Origin: Octopus bimaculoides
Lineage: Eukaryota
Direction: 5' to 3'
Assembly: GCF_001194135.2 (NCBI RefSeq)
Contig: NC_069001.1
Location: 17,823,629-17,857,709, forward strand
Length of the DNA stretch: 34,081 bases
Position 1 is the first letter of the stretch. The number at the start of each line of letters is the position of its first letter. Shown here piece after piece: positions 11,332 through 23,875 of this stretch. The position numbers and the translations under genes are program-made. A model generated the notes under the pieces. It saw nothing but the letters and a program-made list of their open reading frames with translations, was not told the origin of the DNA and did no database searches.

Positions 11332-13387
11332 NNNNNNNNNNNNNNNNNNNNNNNNNNNNNNNNNNNNNNNNNNNNNNNNNNNNNNNNNNNNNNNNNNNNN
11401 NNNNNNNNNNNNNNNNNNNNNNNNNNNNNNNNNNNNNNNNNNNNNNNNNNNNNNNNNNNNNNNNNNNNNNNNNNNNNNNNNNNNNNNNNNNNNNNNNNNN
11501 NNNNNNNNNNNNNNNNNNNNNNNNNNNNNNNNNNNNNNNNNNNNNNNNNNNNNNNNNNNNNNNNNNNNNNNNNNNNNNNNNNNNNNNNNNNNNNNNNNNN
11601 NNNNNNNNNNNNNNNNNNNNNNNNNNNNNNNNNNNNNNNNNNNNNNNNNNNNNNNNNNNNNNNNNNNNNNNNNNNNNNNNNNNNNNNNNNNNNNNNNNNN
11701 NNNNNNNNNNNNNNNNNNNNNNNNNNNNNNNNNNNNNNNNNNNNNNNNNNNNNNNNNNNNNNNNNNNNNNNNNNNNNNNNNNNNNNNNNNNNNNNNNNNN
11801 NNNNNNNNNNNNNNNNNNNNNNNNNNNNNNNNNNNNNNNNNNNNNNNNNNNNNNNNNNNNNNNNNNNNNNNNNNNNNNNNNNNNNNNNNNNNNNNNNNNN
11901 NNNNNNNNNNNNNNNNNNNNNNNNNNNNNNNNNNNNNNNNNNNNNNNNNNNNNNNNNNNNNNNNNNNNNNNNNNNNTATATATATATATATATGCATACA
12001 TGTATATGTATACATATGTATATATATAGATGTACATGTAATATGTTCACATATACACATATATATATGCATACAGATATCTATACATATATATACACCC
12101 ATCACACACACATACACATGCACACAAACACACACATTAGTCATTTGTTTTCTTATCCAAAACTACGTCAAAAGTACTGAATGGATCTTTATGAAATTTG
12201 GAAATTATATCCTATGCATAACGGCCATAACCCCCATGAAAATTCATATATTTTTGATGTTGATGAAATTTTAACCATACATATTACACATAAATAAAGC
12301 AATGTTTCTAAAATTTCTTCTTCATAGAAGTTACAAAGACTCCTTCGTGGGTACTTCACACCCACAATTTAGTCATTTTTCCTAAGCAAAGAGGAATACA
12401 GTTGTACCATTGGAAGCTATAGGGTCACCTGAACATACAGATGAGCATTATTTGTAATTCAACGGTACAACAGTGTAAGACTATCCTTTCAGATATACTT
12501 ACATTGTGATTTCTGCAATGTGGTGCATAAATTGTCAAAATGAGACGCATCTTTGCCTCCACTGATTCACTTGCAAAGTGTTGAGTAAAATTATTTCGTT
12601 GCAGACCTCCTTTGAGTCTTTTTATTATCACTGCGATTCACATAGTCCCCAGTTGGTAACATTGATTTCAAGGCCTTCCCAGATGAGAGACTGGTTGTTC
12701 TAAGACATTTATCGATTGTAAATTTTGTCTGCATAATTACTTATCGGTATANNNNNNNNNNNNNNNNNNNNNNNNNNNNNNNNNNNNNNNNNNNNNNNNN
12801 NNNNNNNNNNNNNNNNNNNNNNNNNNNNNNNNNNNNNNNNNNNNNNNNNNNNNNNNNNNNNNNNNNNNNNNNNNNNNNNNNNNNNNNNNNNNNNNNNNNN
12901 NNNNNNNNNNNNNNNNNNNNNNNNNNNNNNNNNNNNNNNNNNNNNNNNNNNNNNNNNNNNNNNNNNNNNNNNNNNNNNNNNNNNNNNNNNNNNNNNNNNN
13001 NNNNNNNNNNNNNNNNNNNNNNNNNNNNNNNNNNNNNNNNNNNNNNNNNNNNNNNNNNNNNNNNNNNNNNNNNNNNNNNNNNNNNNNNNNNNNNNNNNNN
13101 NNNNNNNNNNNNNNNNNNNNNNNNNNNNNNNNNNNNNNNNNNNNNNNNNNNNNNNNNNNNNNNNNNNNNNNNNNNNNNNNNNNNNNNNNNNNNNNNNNNN
13201 NNNNNNNNNNNNNNNNNNNNNNNNNNNNNNNNNNNNNNNNNNNNNNNNNNNNNNNNNNNNNNNNNNNNNNNNNNNNNNNNNNNNNNNNNNNNNNNNNNNN
13301 NNNNNNNNNNNNNNNNNNNNNNNNNNNNNNNNNNNNNNNNNNNNNNNNNNNNNNNNNNNNNNNNNNNNNNNNNNNNNNNNNNNNNNN

Positions 13388-13422
<35 letters not shown>

Positions 13423-13492
13423 TTAATATATATATGCATATACACATGTATATAGATGCATATGCAGATGTGTGTATACATATAAAGTAATG

Positions 13493-13935
13493 TTCGTAGC
13501 CACTTCAACATGGCTATTCCGTTCGAACGGACTTTACTGCGATTTTTTAACCTTAAGAGGATTTTTTAACATCCTCATGCTAGTTAACGATGCATACCTG
13601 CATCCGATATATTGCGAGCGGGTGTGAGGTGAGTCCCTACCACCTTCTAGCCACGGGACCAGCATACCAGCCTGGTTTCGGGCTATTTCTGTCTCTCTCT
13701 CTTCAGTAATGGACACATCATCTTCTATAGATGGCTGTAGCTCGCTTCTGCTCGTAATATATATAAATTCAAGCGACACACAGTCGTTGATTTTGCAAAA
13801 AGCAAAAATGCTAGTTCTAAAATCTCTCTAAGAGATGAATGCAGTATTTGTACTGACAAGTGGAATATTCGTAGCCATTTCAACATGGCTGTTCCGTTCG
13901 AACGTACTTTACTGCGATTATTTAACCCCAAGAGG
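13493..13935 (-). repeat. 375-bp unit with 68-bp terminal direct repeats (13493-13560 and 13868-13935) containing a hammerhead-like motif
   Basis: The two 68-bp copies differ at about 6 positions. CTGAAGA..GAAAC lies on the minus strand between them. Confidence 0.7.
13659..13712 (-). ncRNA. Candidate minimal type-I hammerhead ribozyme
   Basis: Minus strand reads CCATTA-CTGAAGA-G(18 nt)C-GAA-ACCAGGCTGGT-A-TGCTGG. The core is canonical, stem III is near-palindromic with a GUA triplet, stem I is 5/6 paired and stem II is weak. Confidence 0.5.
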
Positions 13936-17306: not shown

Positions 17307-18002
17307 TTCGTACTTTTTAAGGCAATGCTTGTAAGATTTTGTATATGTACCGTATTTCTCCCAATAGTGTGGCAGTTAATGGGTGTACTTCTGTGTGTAT
17401 GAGTGTGTGTCGGGGTTGTGGGTGCTTGTTCTTGTGTGTGAGGGTGTGTATGTCTATGTGTGCGTGCTTGTTCTTGTGTGCGAGTGTGTGTGTGTGTGTG
17501 TTTGTGCGAACGTGTTCTTGTATAGTCCAACACATCATGTTTAATTTAGCTTTAAAATTAATAGAAATCAATGTTATATTTCTTTCTTACACATTTCCTT
17601 TAATCTACATGTTGCAATATTTCGGCTCTTTGGACTATTATAACNNNNNNNNNNNNNNNNNNNNNNNNNNNNNNNNNNNNNNNNNNNNNNNNNNNNNNNN
17701 NNNNNNNNNNNNNNNNNNNNNNNNNNNNNNNNNNNNNNNNNNNNGTGAACATACATTTATATGAATAAACGTCCGAGCTTGAATGAGCGTAAAACTGACC
17801 AATGCTCTGAGAGAATTTGATAAACTGAAACTCCATGAAAGCTTGTATGTTTGCATTTTGGTGCAGACGATTGTATGAGTATTCATGTTTGTCCCCTCAC
17901 CACTTTGCAACCATTGTTTTGCTTACGGTCTTATAACTTGGTGGATCGGCTTAAGTGAGCGATTAAATGAGTACCCCACCTTAATAAACAAAATGAATGA
18001 GC

Positions 18003-20224
18003 TTGATAACTCGTGGTGTCAAGTGGTAACATGAACAACGTTTGGTGTCAGTTGGCAGCGTAAAGAACGTCTGGTGTCTGTAGGCAACTAAAGGGCGCGT
18101 GGTATCAGTTGGCAACGTATAGAAAGCGCGGTGTCTGTTGGCAACGTCAAAGACGCGTGGTATCGGTGGGAAACGTCGCGTAGTGTCAGTTGGCAATGTA
18201 AAGAACGCTTGGTGTTTGTTGGCAACGTAAAAAACGCGTAGTGTCACTTGGCAACGTAAAAGTAGTGTGGTATCTCTTGGCAACGTAAAGAATGTGTGGT
18301 GTCTGCTGGTAACGTAGAAAACGCGAGGTGTCAGTTGGTAACGTAAAGAACGCGCGGTGTCAGGTGACTACGTACGTAAAGGACGCGTGGTATCAGTTGG
18401 CAGCGTAAACAACCCGTAGCGTCTGTTGGTAACGTAAAGAACGCGTGGTATCAGTTGGCAGCGTAAAGAATGCGTAGTGTTTGTTGGCAATGTAAAGAAC
18501 GTGTGATGTCTGTTGTCAACGTAAAGAACGCTTGGTGTTTGTTGGAAACGTAAATAACGTGTAGTGTCACTTGGCAATGTAAAAGAAACGTGGTATCTCT
18601 TGGCAACGTAAAGAATGCGTAGCGTCTGTTGGCAACGTAAAGAACGCGAGGTGTCAGTTGGTAACGTAAAGAACGCGCGCTGTCAGGTGGCAACGTAAAG
18701 CACGCGTGGTATCAGTAGAAAACGTAAAGAACGCGTAGTGTTTGTTGGTAACGTAAAGAACGCGAGGTGTCGGGTGGCAATGTAAAGAACGTGTGGTATC
18801 AGTTGGCAACGTAAAAGAAACGTGGTATCTCTTGACAACGTAAAGAATGTGTGGTGTCTGTTGGTAACGTAAAAAACGCGAGGTGTCAGCTAGTAACGTA
18901 AAGAACGCCGTGTCAGGTGGCAACGTAAAAGACGCGTGGTATCAGTGGGAAACGTAAAGAACGTGTGGTTGGCAACGTAAAGAACGTGTGGTGTCTGTTG
19001 GCAACGAAAAGAACGCGTTGTGGCTATTGCCAACGTAAAGAACGCGTTGTGGCAGTTGGTAACGTAAAGAAATCTTGGTGCTTGTTGGCAACGTAAAGAA
19101 CGCGTAGTGTCACTTGGCAACGGAAAAGAAGCGTGGTATCGTTGGCAACGTAAAGAATGTGTGGTGTTTGTTGGTAACGTAAAGAACGCGCGGTGTCAGG
19201 TGGCAACGTAAAGCACGCGTACTGTCTGTTGTCAACGTAAAGAACCCGTAGTGTCAGTTGGTAACGTAAAGAACGCGCGGTGACAGGTGGCAACGTAAAG
19301 AACGCATGGTATCAGTTGGCAGCGTAAAGAACGCGTGCAGTTTGTTGGCAACGTAAAGAAGGCGAGATGTCTGATGGTAACGTAAAGAACGTGCGGTGTC
19401 AGGTGGCAACGTAAAGCACGCGTGGTATGAGTTGACTGCATAAAGAACGCGTAGTGTCTGTTGGCAACGTAAAAGACGCGTGGTATCAGTGGAAAACGTA
19501 AAGAAAGTGTGGTGTCTAATGGCAATGTAAAGAATGCGTGGCATCAGTTGGCAATTTAAAGAACGTGTAGAGTCACTTAGCAACGTAAAGAACGCGTTGT
19601 GGCAGTTGGCAATGTAAGGAACGCTTGGTGTTTGTTGGCAACGTAAGGAACGCGTAGTTTCACTTGGCAACGTAAAAAAAGCGTTGTATCCTTTGGCAAC
19701 GTAAAGAATGTGTGGTGTCTGCTGGTAACGTAAAAAACGCGAGGTGTCTGCTGGTAACGTAAAGAACGCAGTGTCAGGTGGCAACGTAAAGGACGCGTGG
19801 TATCCGTTGGCAGCGTAAAGAACGCGTAGTGTCTGTTGGCAACGTAAAGAACGAGAGGTGTCAGTTGATAACGTAAAGAACGCACGCTGTCAGGTGGCAA
19901 CGTAAAGCACACGTGGTATCAGTTGGAAGCGTAAAGAACGCGTAGTGTTTGTCAGTTGGTAACGTAAAGAACGCGTGGCGTCAGTTGGCAACGTAAAGAA
20001 CGTATAGTGTCACTTGGCAACGAAAAGACGCGTGATTTCAGTGGGAAACGTAAAGAACGTGTGGTGTCTGTTGGCAACGTAAGGTATGTGTAGTGTCTGA
20101 TGGCAACGTAAAAAACGCATTGTGGCAGTTGGCAACGTAAAGAAAGCTTGGTGCTTGTTGGCAACGTAAAGAACGCGTAGTGTCACTTGGCAACGTAAAG
20201 AATGCGAGGTGTAAGTTGGCAACA
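18003..20224. repeat. Satellite/minisatellite array of about 75 diverged 29-bp monomers (consensus about GGCAACGTAAAGAACGCGTGGTGTCAGTT)
   Basis: Direct reading; monomer count estimated from length divided by 29. Confidence 0.95.
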
Positions 20225-20450
20225 TAATGATCGCATCAGTTTTTGTGACTAGCTTGAGGTCATCTGTGAATTACAAATTTGCACGAAACGTAAAGGTGTT
20301 TAAAAGCATGCGCCTGCTAGAAATAAGAGCTGAAGTCTTAATTAAACCAAGGTACAGCACCAAAATAGCAGAGAAAAACAGTAGGCGAGGAAACGGAAAT
20401 AATGCATTCATAAGCACAAAATAAAATATTATCCAGTTTTTACTAGCTAG

Positions 20451-20509
20451 TTCGCACTGACGAGGCTCGCGGATTAAACATCTAAAAGCCGAAATATATA
20501 TATATATAT
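20451..20509 (+). ncRNA. Candidate hammerhead ribozyme core, interrupted in its (TA)n stem III by the LTR element
   Basis: CTGACGA (20457-20463), GGCT..AGCC stem II (20464-20467 and 20487-20490), GAAA (20491-20494), then (TA)n. Confidence 0.5.
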
Positions 20510-20819
20510 TGATGCAACCACCGAAAAACAAATTAATGTTATATCCCTATCTTCCGAGCTGGGTATGAAACCGTATTCTGGTTGTTGAGGATAATGGCAT
20601 TTCCTTTGTAATGTTTTGATCATGTAAAAAGAAAAAAGTTAGTTCCACTACCCACGTATGGTCTCCGTGTTATTTCTTCCTCCTGTTGCCTGTTGTCTTC
20701 GTTACGTGCTCCGGTCGGGGCTTAGTCGTGGCGGATATCCCGACTCACTGAGCGTCGACGTTCGCGCGCGCGCGAGTTTCCTCTTCGTAGAGGTGCTTCG
20801 CGTGCGGGCGTTCGTAACA
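20510..20819 (+). repeat. 5' LTR (310 bp, short form)
   Basis: TG..CA ends. 20510-20609 matches 22476-22575 (3 mismatches) and 20610-20682 matches 23397-23469 (identical). Confidence 0.85.
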
Positions 20820-20822
20820 AAC

Positions 20823-20840
20823 TGGTGTCAGAAGTGGGAT
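20823..20840 (+). promoter_or_regulatory. Primer-binding site complementary to the 3' end of tRNA-Leu
   Basis: TGGTGTCAGAAGTGGGAT is the reverse complement of ATCCCACTTCTGACACCA (tRNA-Leu CAG/CAA-type 3' end, from recall); it lies 3 nt after the LTR CA. Confidence 0.85.
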
Positions 20841-20864
20841 TGATTAATTGCTGCAGTGAGTTAG

Positions 20865-22475
20865 TTGTTCGTTGTGGCTTCGGAAGGTGCACGTACGAGG
20901 GGCCAGGCTAGGAGGGAGGAAGTGTCCCTGGCCTTGATTGTGAGGATGCTGGAAGAACAGAAGGAGAGCTTCGCTGAACTCAGGAAAGAGCAACAGAGGT
21001 TGCAGGAGGATCACCGACAGTTTAGGGCGGAGTTACGCGGACTGAGCAGTGATGTCGCATGTTGTAAACAGCAGATGGAAAGGCTGGACAAGAGACTGGA
21101 GCGCGTTGAGAAATTTTGTGCTGCCGAGCCTGAGGTTGCTAAACCTGAAGAAGTTGCTGTTGCTGCGTCATCACGTGATACTCCGACGTCTGGATGCGGA
21201 ACTCCTGGAGTTCGAGGTAGCGGTGTGGTCCCGATTAGGAAGAAGCCACAAGAGGCGCTGGCTAGGGCTCTGGAGTTCGAGTCCTATGTGAAATCGAGCA
21301 CCGGAAATTTCCGGATGAGTGATAGCTCTGGATTCAAGGCAAGGAGAGTAAAAGTCCGTGAAGTTGAAGGACTTGGGAATAGTCAAAAACTTTGTGAGCG
21401 GAAGGAAGAGATGACTGGTGTGTGTTGTTGGCACTGTGGGAGAAGTGGACACAGGCGGCGGGACTGCTATAGTTGGCGGCGAGAGAAGAAACAGAACGAT
21501 AGAGCAGGGTCTGTTTTCAAGGGCGAGTGCTGGTGTTGCAAGAAACAGGGACACATGAGTTATGACTGCCCAACAAGAAATAAGGAGTCGGAAAAACTAA
21601 GAGGAGCTGGTGTTAAGGGGCAACCACCGACCAGACGTTCCAAAGGAGCCCCACACTCGAGACGGCATGCAAGGACTGTGATGGACAGCCTACGAGTGAG
21701 CGGAACAGTTAACGGTCGGACGTGTTCTCTAGTAATTGATTCGGCCTCGGGACAGACTTTTGTGAGGTCCGATGTGTTTCAGGATCTAAACCTGCCAGAG
21801 GCATCGCATCAGTTGTGTGGAGTGACCGGACATTGCACTGAGATGAGAGGGCCAGTTAATGTCCGGATCGATGTTGCTGGACTAGAAGTTGTGCTTCCTG
21901 TTTATGTGGTTGAAATGGAGGATCTGTGCATTTTAGGGTTGGACTATTTAACGTCCATGGCTTGTCATCTGGACTTGCGGTTAATGAAGCTTTCGGTACA
22001 GGGAAGATCGGTCCCTGTTAAGGTGGTAAGACGGACCACGCCTGGTAGCGAGGTAAGAGCGCTACGGACGACAGTGATACCACCGAGGTTGGAAAAGCTG
22101 CTCCAGTGTCGTGTGAGCAGCCCGATTGATGGCTGTCTGGGGCTGGTGGAGCCCGACAGACGAAGCAAGTTGAAAGCTGGAGTGAGGGTCGGACGAACCT
22201 TGGAAGCAGGAGCTGATAAAGTGTTGGATGTAGCAGCCAACTCTTCTGCAGTGGGACAGAAGATTTGTGAAGGACAAATCGTGGGACTGTGTCAGGCAGT
22301 GGACCATCGGCAGAGTCGGTTGCATTGTGCAGGAGAAGAAGTGCACAGTAAAAAGTGCAAACAGGCCACGGTGACTGGATGTGTGTCAACCGGAGAAGTG
22401 CAAAAGAATCGATTTAGGAGTTTGGAAAATGTTGTTTGCTTTTGTCGGGACGACAAAGAACTAGGGAAGGGGTAG
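20865..22475 (+). CDS. Retrotransposon Gag-protease ORF (536 codons open; first ATG at 20946)
   Basis: N-terminal coiled coil; two CCHC knuckles (CWHCGRSGHRRRDC, CWCCKKQGHMSYDC); retropepsin motifs VSGTVNG..LVIDSAS and CILGLDYL. No RT (YxDD), RNase H or integrase motifs. The stop codon abuts the 3' LTR. Confidence 0.85.
   Translation: MFVVASEGARTRGQARREEVSLALIVRMLEEQKESFAELRKEQQRLQEDHRQFRAELRGLSSDVACCKQQMERLDKRLERVEKFCAAEPEVAKPEEVAVAASSRDTPTSGCGTPGVRGSGVVPIRKKPQEALARALEFESYVKSSTGNFRMSDSSGFKARRVKVREVEGLGNSQKLCERKEEMTGVCCWHCGRSGHRRRDCYSWRREKKQNDRAGSVFKGECWCCKKQGHMSYDCPTRNKESEKLRGAGVKGQPPTRRSKGAPHSRRHARTVMDSLRVSGTVNGRTCSLVIDSASGQTFVRSDVFQDLNLPEASHQLCGVTGHCTEMRGPVNVRIDVAGLEVVLPVYVVEMEDLCILGLDYLTSMACHLDLRLMKLSVQGRSVPVKVVRRTTPGSEVRALRTTVIPPRLEKLLQCRVSSPIDGCLGLVEPDRRSKLKAGVRVGRTLEAGADKVLDVAANSSAVGQKICEGQIVGLCQAVDHRQSRLHCAGEEVHSKKCKQATVTGCVSTGEVQKNRFRSLENVVCFCRDDKELGKG
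22455..22475 (+). promoter_or_regulatory. Polypurine tract
   Basis: AAAGAACTAGGGAAGGGGTAG immediately before the TGATGC start of the 3' LTR. Confidence 0.8.
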
Positions 22476-23469
22476 TGATGCGACCACCGAAAAACAAATT
22501 AATGTTATATCCCTATCTCCCGAGCTGGGTCTGAAACCGTATTCTGGTTGTTGAGGATAATGGCATTTCCTTTGTCTTGTCAACAACCACAGCTATTTTT
22601 AGCGTAGATGTGATCGTTGACTCTTTCCGGTCACCAAAAGTTCAGAAAAACAAGTGAGGAATTGTACTGAACTGACCCAGCTTTGGGAGGGGGTAAGGTA
22701 GCACTGTAAAGCTACCGTATTTGTGATTAATACGACAGCGATATTNNNNNNNNNNNNNNNNNNNNNNNNNNNNNNNNNNNNNNNNNNNNGAGGCAGTTGG
22801 CCAGTCGGTTAGCCAGTGAAGATGTCCAGGAGTTGGATGAAGAACGTCAGCCAGTGAAGATGTCCAGTAGTTGGATGAAGAACGTCAGCCAGTGAAGATG
22901 TACAGCAGTTGATGTGAAAGCCAGTGGGTCAGCAAGATGAACAGAGAGACTGACAGTCAGAGGCTGAGAAAGAGAGAGGCTATGGGGAGAAAGTACCAGT
23001 CAACCGATAGAGACTGAGGCAATGAGAGAGAGAGACAGAGATGGAACTGTTGTGGAAGCCAAGAGATTGTAGTAGTCAGTTGGTCACTACTTTGTGGATT
23101 ATAGTAGGAGTTCTGAAAGAAAGGGAATTCGTGCGGTGAAGGTTTGTTTAAATATTCTTTAAAATGTACTTCGTCGATACATGTTTTAAAAGAAGAAAAG
23201 AACTGTTAACTTTTGTGTGATGTTAACTGAAAAGAAAAGAAAGAACTTTGTGACATGTTGTTAATGGAAAAGAAAAACAACGAAGTGAAAGAACTTTTAA
23301 TTCGACTTGATATATGAAAACCTTTCTATTGTTACACGTGCTTAGAACTTTATTGCTAAATGTTATTTGAATTGTTATGCAATGTATTGATGATGTAATG
23401 TTTTGATCATGTAAAAAGAAAAAAGTTAGTTCCACTACCCACGTATGGTCTCCGTGTTATTTCTTCCTC
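22476..23469 (+). repeat. 3' LTR (long form, over 990 bp, truncated by a gap)
   Basis: Matches both parts of the 5' LTR, separated by about 820 extra bp (22576-23396). Confidence 0.8.
22811..22910. repeat. 38-bp tandem repeat, about 2.6 copies, inside the 3' LTR
   Basis: AGCCAGTGAAGATGTCCAG(G/T)AGTTGGATGAAGAACGTC at 22811 and 22849, partial at 22887. Confidence 0.9.
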
Positions 23470-23591
23470 NNNNNNNNNNNNNNNNNNNNNNNNNNNNNNN
23501 NNNNNNNNNNNNNNNNNNNNNNNNNNNNNNNNNNNNNNNNNNNNNNNNNNNNNNNNNNNNNNNNNNNNNNNNNNNNNNNNNNNNNNNNNNN

Positions 23592-23625
<34 letters not shown>

Positions 23626-23626
23626 T

Positions 23627-23875
23627 GCGTGAAGGTGCATGGCCCACTGGTTAGAGCATCGAGCTTACGATCGTGAGGTTGTGAGTTCGAATCGCGGACC
23701 AGGCTGCGTGTTGTGTTCTTAAGCAAGACATTTTATTTCGCGTTGATCCAGTTCACTCAGCTGTAGAAATGAATTGCGACGTCACTGGTGCCAAGCCGTG
23801 TCGTCTTTTGCCTTTCCCTTGGATAATATTGGTGGTGTGGAGAGGGGAGGTCGGTATGCATGGGCGTCTGCTAGT
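23627..23875 (+). mobile_element. tRNA-derived SINE (third family)
   Basis: A-box-like TGGCCCACTGG (23640-23650), B-box GAGTTCGAATC (23683-23693), CORE-like TTAAGCAAGACATTTTA. Confidence 0.8.

What the first reader, a model, noticed from the sequence alone, without database searches (positions are those of the whole stretch)
20510..23591. LTR element encoding only Gag-remnant plus protease, with all cis signals intact
Seen: LTR, 18-nt perfect tRNA-Leu PBS, one 1.6-kb ORF with no stops or frameshifts whose stop codon ends exactly at the PPT/3' LTR boundary, and LTR copies differing at only 3 of 173 alignable bases. No RT, RNase H or integrase. Every other element in the window is riddled with stops. 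Known: non-autonomous Gag-only LTR elements (TR-GAG) are described mainly in plants. Inference: either a young parasite mobilised in trans by an autonomous Gypsy helper, or a single recent deletion derivative; an ORF retained under selection would suggest an interfering or co-opted protein.
Basis: partly seen in the sequence, partly recalled or inferred. Interest (0 to 1): 0.75.

Follow-up and report, generated by a model that had tools for sequence, protein, structure and literature searches.

The report
Deleted octopus Gypsy retrotransposon copy
This is a real but ordinary non-autonomous copy of an octopus Ty3/Gypsy retrotransposon that lost its capsid core, reverse transcriptase, RNase H and integrase through three internal deletions. 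It belongs to a small subfamily sharing two of those deletions, and its short 5' LTR is probably an assembly artefact.

Summary
The element is real. It has LTR ends, an 18-nt PBS matching the tRNA-Leu(CAA) 3' end, and a 536-codon open frame whose TAG abuts the 3' LTR. The LTRs show 3 mismatches in 176 comparable bases. The two N gaps lie in the 3' LTR, not in the ORF.

It is not a Gag-plus-protease element made by one deletion. Compared with a near-full-length Octopus sinensis relative, it carries three internal deletions:
- J1 at 21254/21255 removes about 143 aa of capsid core, in frame.
- J2 at 22323/22324 removes RT and RNase H, in frame.
- J3 at 22408-22429 removes integrase.

Exact single-copy contigs from independent runs cover all three junctions. 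Other contigs with 1-6 mismatches cross J1 and J2 at about 5-15 copy-equivalents. This points to a small non-autonomous subfamily, alongside capsid- and integrase-containing relatives.

Caveats:
- The 5' LTR as assembled lacks 818 bp present in the 3' LTR, and its internal joint is found in none of 8 runs, so it is probably collapsed.
- The ancestral gag ATG is GTG here.
- RNA evidence is negligible.
- The open frame is expected for a young copy and needs no selection.

Verdict: a new member of a known kind, of low to moderate interest.

The parts
20494..20509 (.). (TA)n microsatellite flank on the 5' side. The same motif resumes at 23592 after the gap.
   Evidence: An exact 107-nt contig covering 20417-20523 at single-copy depth (17.8) in X1 joins the flank to the LTR start.
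20510..20819 (+). 5' LTR as assembled (310 nt, TG...CA). It consists of segment A (20510-20609) joined directly to segment C (20610-20819). The A|C joint is probably an assembly collapse that lost the ~818-bp middle segment B.
   Evidence: Searches give the repeat structure. In some searches, none of 8 runs has a contig crossing 20609/20610. Left-side contigs continue into B ('CTTGTCAACAACCACAG...'). Right-side contigs come from the end of B.
20823..20840 (+). Primer binding site TGGTGTCAGAAGTGGGAT, complementary to the 3' end of tRNA-Leu(CAA). It follows a 3-nt AAC spacer.
   Evidence: It matches 18/18 the printed human tRNA-Leu-CAA-2-1 3' end. It is identical at L002:8382 in O. sinensis. The octopus tRNA itself was not examined.
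20874..20876 (+). Position of the ancestral gag start codon, mutated to GTG in this copy. The first in-frame ATG is at 20946.
   Evidence: L002 has CCACCATGGCTTCA at this position, and P0002 starts MASEGAR against VASEGAR in the window.
20865..22475 (+). Open frame of 536 codons (509 from the first ATG). It encodes the Gag N-terminal coiled-coil region, then the capsid deletion, the NC region, the protease, the post-protease region, an RNase H/integrase linker fragment and translated pre-PPT sequence.
21254..21255 (+). J1: in-frame deletion of the capsid core (~143 aa, ~430 nt). KKPQE is joined to ALARALEFE.
   Evidence: BLASTP against P0005 and P0004 and blastn against L002, where 8780 joins to 9208. 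An exact 61-nt contig covering 21221-21281 has single-copy depth in X1, X2 and X4. Variant contigs also cross the joint at 2-6x single-copy depth. Weak SCAN/PNMA capsid-like hits lie in the deleted part of relatives.
21426..21569 (+). Nucleocapsid region with two CCHC zinc knuckles: CWHCGRSGHRRRDC at 21426-21467 and CWCCKKQGHMSYDC at 21528-21569.
   Evidence: There is 87% identity to P0004, a CCHC-type protein.
21696..21953 (+). Retropepsin-type aspartyl protease. The active-site motif is DSAS (21738-21749), not the usual D-T/S-G.
   Evidence: Pfam Asp_protease_2, E=4e-6, aa 278-360. DSAS is also present in L002 and in crab P0003.
22323..22324 (+). J2: in-frame deletion of RT and RNase H (~1.37 kb; L002 10296 joined to 11667) with 2-nt GC microhomology.
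   Evidence: An exact contig covering 22279-22362 is present in X5. Variant contigs cross the joint at ~4-13 copy-equivalents.
22324..22407 (+). Retained fragment of the RNase H-integrase linker, still read in its native pol frame.
   Evidence: blastn 76% to L002 11667-11749. tblastn 64% over 28 aa in the frame of the L002 RNase H ORF.
22408..22429 (+). J3 zone: deletion of integrase (~1.3 kb; L002 11750-13074). About 22 nt here cannot be clearly assigned to either side.
   Evidence: An exact 105-nt contig covering 22333-22437 has single-copy depth in X1, X2, X4 and X5. About 3-5 copy-equivalents share this arrangement. A sister single-copy contig has other letters between 22412 and 22428.
22430..22475 (+). 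Pre-PPT non-coding sequence and the polypurine tract (AGGGAAGGGGTAG). The ORF's TAG stop (22473-22475) lies inside the tract.
   Evidence: 88% identity to L002 13075-13123, which sits directly before that element's 3' LTR. Contigs covering 22427-22493 are multi-copy.
22476..23591 (+). 3' LTR. Segment A is 22476-22575. Segment B is 22576-23393, with a 44-N gap at 22746-22789 and a 38-bp tandem repeat of 2.7 copies at 22811-22911. Segment C is 23394-23469. The expected last ~137 nt fall in the 122-N gap.
   Evidence: The A-to-B continuity is multi-copy in reads. The relative's LTR is ~786 nt, which supports a long LTR as the normal form.

Best explanation
The locus is one insertion of a non-autonomous, internally deleted Ty3/Gypsy LTR retrotransposon, most likely in Octopus bimaculoides.

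Compared with a near-full-length relative (gag with capsid, protease, RT, RNase H, integrase), the element has lost three blocks:
- the capsid core (J1, in frame);
- RT plus RNase H (J2, in frame, with 2-nt microhomology);
- integrase (J3).

It keeps what reverse transcription and integration need in cis: LTR ends, a tRNA-Leu(CAA) PBS and the PPT. The remaining frame would encode a fusion of the Gag N-terminus, two zinc knuckles, the protease, a short pol linker piece and translated non-coding sequence.

Shown:
- the anatomy;
- the three deletions;
- that all three joints exist in the DNA of several independently sequenced samples;
- that J1 and J2 recur in several diverged paralogous copies;
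- that relatives with capsid and integrase sequence are present in the same genome.

Inferred:
- the deletions arose by template switching of reverse transcriptase at short homologies;
- the deleted RNA was then packaged, reverse transcribed and integrated by proteins supplied in trans by autonomous relatives, giving a small subfamily;
- this particular copy is a young, now decaying insertion whose open frame needs no selection to explain it. Its start codon is lost and it shows no specific RNA;
- the short 5' LTR is an assembly collapse, and the true 5' LTR is about 1.1 kb like the 3' LTR.
For: - Family placement: the ORF hits octopus gag and protease fragments at 75-87% identity.
- Full-length relative: O. 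sinensis L002 has LTR (~786 nt), the identical PBS, gag, PR, RVT_1, RNase H, Integrase_H2C2/rve and PPT, in Gypsy order.
- Collinear matches define the joints. J1 is L002 8780 joined to 9208. J2 is 10296 joined to 11667. J3 is 11750 joined to 13075. BLASTP to P0005 and P0004 shows the ~143-aa capsid gap.
- Exact contigs at single-copy depth cover every joint: 21221-21281 at depth 18 / 38.9 / 44 in X1, X2, X4; 22279-22362 in X5; 22333-22437 in X1, X2, X4, X5. They also cover flank to LTR (20417-20523).
- Depth of contigs crossing J1 is 116 / 577-632 / 373-436 / 63, against single-copy depth of about 17 / 42 / 45 / 7. That gives about 7-15 copies.
- Depth at 22295-22300, which should be almost entirely J2-crossing contigs (only 29 nt lie left of the joint), is 95 / 550 / 705 / 115, or about 5-16 copies.
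- Loose ends show copies continuing into capsid (TTCGATGGCAAGGTG...) and integrase (GGCAGATGGAAGATGCCGACTTAGGGC).
- The 5' LTR joint is absent from 8 runs.
- The start codon is lost.
- RNA is negligible.
Against: - No second copy was seen with its own flanks, LTR pair or target-site duplication, so retrotransposition of the deleted form is inferred from junction depth only. Segmental duplication or recombination between copies could spread a junction.
- Copy numbers come from mean k-mer depth of short contigs and vary about 2-fold between runs.
- No intact autonomous helper with the same LTR and PBS was identified in this species.
- The reference for the deletions is a decayed copy from another species (76-88% identity near the joints), so joint positions are accurate only to a few bases and J3 is fuzzy.
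- It was not verified that the 2015 runs come from the assembled individual, so a private real deletion in the 5' LTR is not fully excluded.
Confidence: 0.7

Rival explanations
1. This is a dead, one-off deletion derivative. A full-length element inserted here and then lost internal sequence at the DNA level. The other junction-bearing copies arose by segmental duplication or gene conversion, not by trans-mobilisation.
For: - The exact sequence of this copy is single-copy.
- No independent flanks of other copies were seen.
- The start codon is lost and there is no specific RNA.
- The exact J3 arrangement is low-copy, about 3-5.
Against: - J1- and J2-crossing contigs differ from this copy by 2-10% and reach 5-15 copy-equivalents, whereas this copy's LTRs differ by only 1.7%. 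Copies made by duplicating this insertion should be no more diverged than its LTRs.
- The 5' flank is single-copy, so the locus is not in a recent duplication.
- Three independent post-insertion deletions, two of them in frame, that all spare the PBS and PPT are less likely than deletions made during reverse transcription.
Confidence: 0.15
2. The truncated structure is an assembly artefact. A full-length element was collapsed or misjoined by the short-read assembler.
For: - The scaffold is gap-rich, with 13 N runs.
- The 5' LTR A|C joint has no support in 8 runs.
- The LTRs are ~100-300-copy repeats that contigs cannot bridge.
Against: - J1, J2 and J3 are each covered by exact contigs at single-copy depth in runs from several samples and years.
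- The shared letters at the joints (at most 2-6 nt) are far shorter than any assembly k-mer.
- This rival therefore holds only for the 5' LTR, and possibly for the link between the flank and the internal region through the LTR.
Confidence: 0.05
3. The capsid-less Gag-NC-protease fusion ORF is kept by selection. It could act in cis to favour packaging of its own RNA, as the IAP 1-delta-1 gag-pol fusion does. Or it could be a host-co-opted or interfering protein.
For: - Both large coding deletions are in frame.
- The frame is open for 536 codons.
- The J1-bearing lineage appears older (up to ~10% divergence near J1) than this insertion, so the lineage may have kept the frame for some time.
- There is a precedent in mouse IAP 1-delta-1 (PMC6466679).
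Against: - The initiator ATG is lost in this copy.
- RNA is near zero and not copy-specific.
- The last ~50 codons are accidental read-through of linker and non-coding sequence ending in the PPT.
- LTRs, PBS and PPT are retained, as in a mobile copy rather than a domesticated gene.
- With 1.7% LTR divergence, about 14 substitutions are expected in the ORF. My estimate of the chance of no stop is about one half.
- ORF status of the sister copies is unknown.
Confidence: 0.1

Closest known systems
Mouse IAP 1-delta-1 (I-delta-1) elements
   Same: An LTR element with an internal in-frame deletion that fuses gag to downstream pol sequence in one ORF. It is non-autonomous and needs Gag and Pol from full-length relatives. 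The deleted form is a substantial part of the family (PMC6466679).
   Different: - IAP is a vertebrate class II endogenous retrovirus and this is an invertebrate Ty3/Gypsy element.
- IAP 1-delta-1 has one 1.9-kb deletion, whereas here there are three deletions removing capsid, RT/RNase H and integrase.
- Trans-mobilisation and a cis effect of the fusion protein were shown experimentally for IAP. Nothing of that kind is shown here.
TR-GAG and GAG/PROT-only non-autonomous LTR retrotransposons of plants
   Same: LTRs, PBS and PPT are kept, with a single ORF from the gag end of the element and no RT, RNase H or integrase. Twenty-eight sugar beet families retain only GAG/PROT domains (PMC13570524).
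   Different: - TR-GAGs are defined by a retained GAG ORF. Here the capsid core of Gag is deleted and the protease is retained.
- This is an animal (cephalopod) host.
- The subfamily is small.
ETn/MusD, LARD and TRIM-type non-autonomous LTR elements
   Same: They depend on an autonomous relative's proteins and keep LTR, PBS and PPT. The non-autonomous form can outnumber or rival the autonomous one (PMC6466679, PMC13570524).
   Different: Those elements have essentially no coding capacity. This one keeps 1.6 kb of recognisable gag, protease and pol sequence in an open frame.
Autonomous Ty3/Gypsy elements of octopus (e.g. the copy in O. sinensis VCDQ01000480, L002:~7593-13906)
   Same: - The PBS is identical, the PPT is near-identical, and gag and protease share about 77-80% nucleotide identity.
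- Domain order and the DSAS protease motif are the same.
   Different: The relative carries capsid, RT, RNase H and integrase, although it has decayed with frameshifts. Its LTR sequences are not alignable between the two species.

Membership tests
Ty3/Gypsy (Metaviridae) LTR retrotransposon | Direct long terminal repeats with TG...CA ends flanking an internal region | tested here: met
   20510-20819 and 22476-23469+ share segments with 3/100 and 0/76 mismatches. The ends are TGATGC...GTAACA. Caveat: the 5' LTR as assembled lacks 818 bp, and the end of the 3' LTR is in a gap.
Ty3/Gypsy (Metaviridae) LTR retrotransposon | PBS complementary to a tRNA 3' end next to the 5' LTR, and a polypurine tract next to the 3' LTR | tested here: met
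   The PBS matches 18/18 the printed human tRNA-Leu-CAA 3' end and is identical in L002. The PPT AGGGAAGGGGTAG abuts 22476 and is conserved in L001 and L002.
Ty3/Gypsy (Metaviridae) LTR retrotransposon | Pol domain order PR-RT-RNase H-IN | tested here: met
   This holds only in the full-length relative L002. The window copy itself keeps only PR and a linker fragment.
Ty3/Gypsy (Metaviridae) LTR retrotransposon | Target-site duplication flanking the insertion | tested here: inconclusive
   Both flanks are (TA)n, and the 3' junction lies in the gap 23470-23591.
TR-GAG (terminal-repeat retrotransposon with GAG domain) | A single ORF encoding GAG with its capsid domain | tested here: not met
   About 143 aa of capsid core are deleted at J1. 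Pfam finds no capsid-type domain in the ORF.
TR-GAG (terminal-repeat retrotransposon with GAG domain) | All enzymatic domains (PR, RT, RH, IN) absent | tested here: not met
   The protease domain is present (Asp_protease_2, E=4e-6). RT, RH and IN are absent.
Non-autonomous deletion-derivative subfamily (IAP 1-delta-1-like) | The same internal deletion joint is shared by several copies | tested here: met
   J1 and J2 are crossed by variant contigs at about 5-15 copy-equivalents in X1, X2, X4 and X5. Only about 3-5 share the J3 arrangement. The loci of these copies were not seen.
Non-autonomous deletion-derivative subfamily (IAP 1-delta-1-like) | Copies lie at different loci, each with its own LTR pair and TSD (evidence of transposition after the deletion) | not testable with these tools
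   No searchable octopus genome assembly was available, and public-run contigs are about 60-500 nt.
Non-autonomous deletion-derivative subfamily (IAP 1-delta-1-like) | Mobilised in trans by an autonomous relative; the fusion protein acts in cis | not testable with these tools
   Only indirect evidence exists: capsid- and integrase-containing copies are present in the same genome.
Domesticated gag/protease-derived host gene | Loss of LTR/PBS/PPT, an intact start codon and detectable expression | tested here: not met
   LTRs, PBS and PPT are present, the ATG has mutated to GTG, and RNA is near zero and not copy-specific.

The most novel reading that the evidence does not exclude
The capsid-less Gag-NC-protease fusion frame has been kept open by selection within a non-autonomous cephalopod Gypsy lineage. 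The protein would favour packaging of its own RNA in cis (as in IAP 1-delta-1) or interfere with the helper. That would make this an animal counterpart of plant 'semi-autonomous' GAG/PROT elements.
Probability: 0.1. Interest if true: 0.6.

Novelty: new member of a known kind. Interest (0 to 1): 0.28.

Why it matters
Non-autonomous LTR retrotransposons that keep part of gag are well described in plants and in mouse ERVs. They are hardly described in molluscs: the mollusc LTR survey I read does not mention non-autonomous elements at all (PMC6238403). A small capsid-less, RT-less subfamily in octopus adds one more case of parasitism on Gypsy elements. It also shows that de novo LTR counts in cephalopods mix autonomous and derivative copies. 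In practice, it is a warning that LTR structure in this short-read assembly is unreliable: the 5' LTR here is very likely collapsed. LTR-based dating, and claims that cis signals are intact, should therefore be made from long-read assemblies. Nothing here bears on a long-standing open question.

Tried and rejected
1. I first read the ORF's C-terminus (..FRSLENVVCFCRDDKELGKG) as the start of the RT region, implying one deletion from RT to PPT. Alignment to L002 showed instead an RNase H-integrase linker fragment plus pre-PPT non-coding sequence, and therefore two separate deletions.

2. My first script read only the first record of a two-record file and seemed to place the near-full-length copy in the O. 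vulgaris locus. I corrected this: the near-full-length copy is L002 (O. sinensis). L001 (O. vulgaris) is a different deletion derivative.

3. Horizontal transfer between octopus and crab. Petrolisthes proteins hit at 61% identity locally. The crab locus shows only 66-70% nucleotide and 47-54% amino-acid identity and lacks this PBS. I rejected the idea.

4. Splicing as the origin of the deletions. J1 has no GT..AG boundaries. J2 starts with GTAAC but does not end cleanly in AG given the single C at the joint. This is not supported, though it is not strictly excluded for J2.

5. RNA support. Three raw RNA runs and one RNA contig set gave only scattered reads, mostly from other copies.

6. A look-up of an O. 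bimaculoides paralogue locus (P0002) found nothing on record.

7. tRNA and Rfam scans of the window and loci found nothing, so the PBS could only be compared with a published human tRNA-Leu sequence.

8. The multiple alignment of the ORF with paralogue proteins was distorted by the deletions. I used pairwise BLASTP instead.

9. I ran no further search on finding an intact pol in O. bimaculoides, because read ends already show integrase-containing copies.


Full report
**What is in the sequence**

The window is a gap-rich short-read scaffold with 13 N runs. The ORF's closest database hits are Octopus bimaculoides gag and protease fragments at 75-87% identity, so the window probably comes from that species.

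At 20510-23591 there is an LTR element inserted in a (TA)n tract. Its parts, in order, are:
- A 5' LTR at 20510-20819, running TGATGC...GTAACA.
- An AAC spacer, then the PBS TGGTGTCAGAAGTGGGAT at 20823-20840.
- An open frame at 20865-22475.
- The purine tract AGGGAAGGGGTAG, whose last three letters are the stop codon.
- A 3' LTR starting at 22476.

The PBS is the exact reverse complement of the last 18 nt, CCA included, of human tRNA-Leu-CAA-2-1 as printed in PMC10359600. It is letter-for-letter identical in an O. sinensis relative. The octopus tRNA itself could not be examined, because no tRNA was found in any sequence held.

The two LTRs share 100 nt with 3 mismatches and 76 nt with none.

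**Gaps**

Both N runs in the finding lie in the 3' LTR. The first, 22746-22789, is in its middle segment. The second, 23470-23591, covers the expected last ~137 nt of the LTR and the junction with the flank.

The stretch 20510-22745, which holds the whole ORF, has no N. The frame question therefore does not arise. Continuity across the gaps could not be shown: contigs run into the first gap from both sides without bridging it. Because the 3' end is unread and both flanks are (TA)n, no target-site duplication can be read.

**The LTRs are not equivalent**

The 3' LTR has three segments:
- Segment A, 22476-22575.
- Segment B, 22576-23393 (818 bp), containing a 38-bp tandem repeat.
- Segment C, from 23394 on.

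The 5' LTR joins A directly to C at 20609/20610.

I laid contigs from eight public DNA runs on that joint. Four of the runs are from 2015 and come from one sample. None crosses the joint. Every contig arriving from the left continues into segment B ('CTTGTCAACAACCACAGCTATTTTTAGCGT'). Every contig arriving from the right comes out of the end of B. Depth falls to zero or near zero at 20611-20616.

In the same runs, every other unique joint of this element is recovered at single-copy depth. The O. sinensis relative has LTRs of about 786 nt, and the O. vulgaris copy continues from A into B.

The short 5' LTR is therefore most likely a collapsed or wrongly closed assembly gap. If it were real, the copy would lack most of U3.

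**Three deletions, not one**

A near-full-length relative was retrieved from O. sinensis (L002). It has LTRs, the same PBS, gag, protease, RVT_1, RNase H, integrase (H2C2, rve, C-terminal domain) and the PPT, in Gypsy order. It is decayed by frameshifts.

The window matches it collinearly in pieces:

| Window | L002 | Meaning |
|---|---|---|
| up to 21253 | up to 8780 | gag N-terminus |
| 21249-22323 | 9208-10296 | gag C-terminus, protease, post-protease region |
| 22322-22407 | 11667-11749 | RNase H-integrase linker fragment |
| 22430-22477 | 13075-13123 | pre-PPT sequence, PPT, LTR start |

This defines three joints:
- **J1 (21254/21255)** removes about 430 nt, or about 143 aa. KKPQE is joined to ALARALEFE. 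In paralogues this interval reads FDGKVSWEAY...TMQE and carries weak SCAN/PNMA capsid-type matches.
- **J2 (22323/22324)** removes about 1.37 kb, covering RT and RNase H, with a 2-nt GC overlap. The retained 84-nt piece is still read in its native pol frame, so the deletion is in frame.
- **J3 (22408-22429)** removes about 1.3 kb covering integrase. About 22 nt there cannot be clearly assigned to either side.

The last 15-23 codons of the ORF (from 22430, or from 22408 if the unassigned J3 letters are counted) are translated non-coding sequence ending in the PPT.

The predicted product has these parts:
- a coiled-coil Gag N-terminus;
- no capsid;
- two CCHC knuckles;
- a protease (Pfam Asp_protease_2, E=4e-6; motif DSAS);
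- the post-protease region;
- 28 aa of pol linker;
- a junk tail.

The ancestral initiator is GTG in this copy. L002 has CCACCATGGCT at that position, and paralogue P0002 starts MASEGAR. The first in-frame ATG is at 20946.

**Are the deletions real?**

Yes. Exact contigs with zero differences cover:
- J1 (21221-21281) at depth 18 / 38.9 / 44 in X1, X2, X4;
- J2 (22279-22362) in X5;
- J3 (22333-22437) in X1, X2, X4, X5;
- the flank-to-LTR joint (20417-20523).

These depths equal those of the unique flank. The overlaps at the joints are at most a few letters, far below any assembly k-mer. A misassembled full-length element is therefore excluded for the internal region.

**One copy or a family?**

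Besides the exact contig, several contigs with 1-6 mismatches cross J1 completely. One example is a 113-nt contig at depth 37.5 / 203 / 26 in X1, X4, X5. Others are 60-61-nt contigs at depth 122 and 244 in X2.

| Measure | X1 | X2 | X4 | X5 |
|---|---|---|---|---|
| Single-copy depth (approx.) | 17 | 42 | 45 | 7 |
| Summed depth of J1-crossing contigs | 116 | 577-632 | 373-436 | 63 |
| Depth at 22295-22300, taken as J2-crossing | 95 | 550 | 705 | 115 |

From these numbers:
- J1 is present in about 7-15 copies. That is a quarter to a half of all copies matching the sequence just right of the joint.
- The J2 row gives about 5-16 copies. Only 29 nt lie left of J2 in that stretch, so contigs laid at its start should be those that cross the joint; this is an inference, not a direct count.
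- About 3-5 copy-equivalents share the 22413-22427 segment of J3. Other contigs diverge at 22412 into different sequence. One single-copy sister contig has other letters between 22412 and 22428.

Read ends also show copies that continue into capsid after 21254 (TTCGATGGCAAGGTGTCGTGGG...) and into integrase after 22407 (GGCAGATGGAAGATGCCGACTTAGGGC). Longer relatives therefore exist in the same genome.

The junction-sharing copies differ from this one by 2-10% near J1. This copy's LTRs differ by only 1.7%, and its 5' flank is single-copy. That pattern fits repeated insertion of an already deleted lineage better than duplication of this locus. Because no second copy was seen with its own flanks, this remains an inference.

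**Expression and selection**

Three raw RNA runs (about 6% of each was read) and one RNA contig set gave a few dozen reads. Most are 95-99% alike, meaning they come from other copies. None crosses a joint, and there is none at all in 22180-22279. The one long RNA contig is of the capsid-containing type.

An open 1.6-kb frame is not surprising in a young copy. With 1.7% LTR divergence, about 14 substitutions are expected in the ORF. By my estimate the chance of none creating a stop is about one half. The lost ATG fits neutral decay.

I therefore see no positive evidence for selection or co-option. The ORF status of the sister copies is unknown.

**Mechanism**

- Shown: the cis elements for reverse transcription (PBS, PPT, LTR ends) are present, RT, RNase H, integrase and capsid are absent, and the deleted form is multi-copy.
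- Inferred from established retroelement biology: the deletions arose by template switching of reverse transcriptase at short homologies. The deleted RNA was then packaged and copied by Gag and Pol from autonomous relatives.

**Comparison with known kinds**

The closest functional analogue is mouse IAP 1-delta-1. It has an in-frame internal deletion, a gag-pol fusion ORF, and non-autonomous but successful spread (PMC6466679).

Plant TR-GAG and GAG/PROT-only families are similar in outline (PMC13570524). Strict TR-GAG membership fails, because the capsid is missing and the protease is present.

A survey of mollusc LTR elements that includes O. bimaculoides does not mention non-autonomous elements (PMC6238403).

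**Verdict**

This is a real, ordinary non-autonomous Gypsy derivative belonging to a small subfamily. The assembly of its 5' LTR is unreliable. It is a new member of a known kind, of low to moderate interest.

Noticed in passing
window 18008-20234: A 29-bp satellite (consensus AACGCGTGGTGTCAGTTGGCAACGTAAAG), about 77 copies at 74% matches, lies directly upstream of the element. Long spurious ORFs run through it on the minus strand.
   Followed up: partly
window ~23625-23800: A tRNA-like sequence with box A- and box B-like motifs (TGGTTAGAGC, GAGTTCGAATCGC) lies just after the (TA)n tract. Its k-mer depth in DNA runs is enormous (about 1e5 in X1 against a single-copy depth of about 17), so it is probably a very abundant tRNA-derived SINE. 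ARAGORN and Rfam found nothing.
   Followed up: partly
window 21738-21749; L002 ~9706; P0003: The protease catalytic motif is D-S-A-S rather than the usual D-T/S-G-A. It is conserved in the O. sinensis copy and in a crab (Petrolisthes cinctipes) relative, so it is a family trait and not a defect of this copy.
   Followed up: partly
L003 (Petrolisthes cinctipes JAWQEG010000216), 10199-13499: A porcelain-crab Gypsy element is the nearest non-cephalopod relative (61% aa identity locally). At locus level it shows only 66-70% nt and 47-54% aa identity and has a different PBS. There is no sign of recent horizontal transfer.
   Followed up: yes
L001 (O. vulgaris OX597815) 17945-19368: An independent deletion derivative of the same family. 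The post-protease region continues as in the full-length form past the J2 position, and only ~930 nt separate it from the PPT and 3' LTR. Several database 'proteins' (P0001, P0008, P0009) also skip internal gag or protease parts. Internal deletions, or spliced gene models over decayed copies, are therefore frequent in this family.
   Followed up: partly
window 20565 and 22531: At this one LTR position the 5' copy has A and the 3' copy has C, while nearly all family reads have T (loose ends 'CTGGGTTT'). Two different changes at the same site in two LTRs of one element is odd. It may reflect assembly noise in a high-copy repeat.
   Followed up: no
window 20819-20821: Some contigs sharing the LTR end continue not into the tRNA-Leu PBS but into 'ATTGGTGTTAAGAGACAGCCTA' (X5, 3 contigs) or into unrelated AT-rich sequence. 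Some may be 3' or solo LTR ends. The first may be a sub-lineage with a different primer site.
   Followed up: no
run X15 (organism B): A 2016 run from a second species label holds 12% of the element's 31-mers, so near-identical family members occur in another species.
   Followed up: no
window 20350-20404: In the unique 5' flank, the only contigs found in X5 and X1 differ from the window at 20350, 20351, 20353 and 20404. This could be haplotype differences or assembly errors in the scaffold.
   Followed up: no
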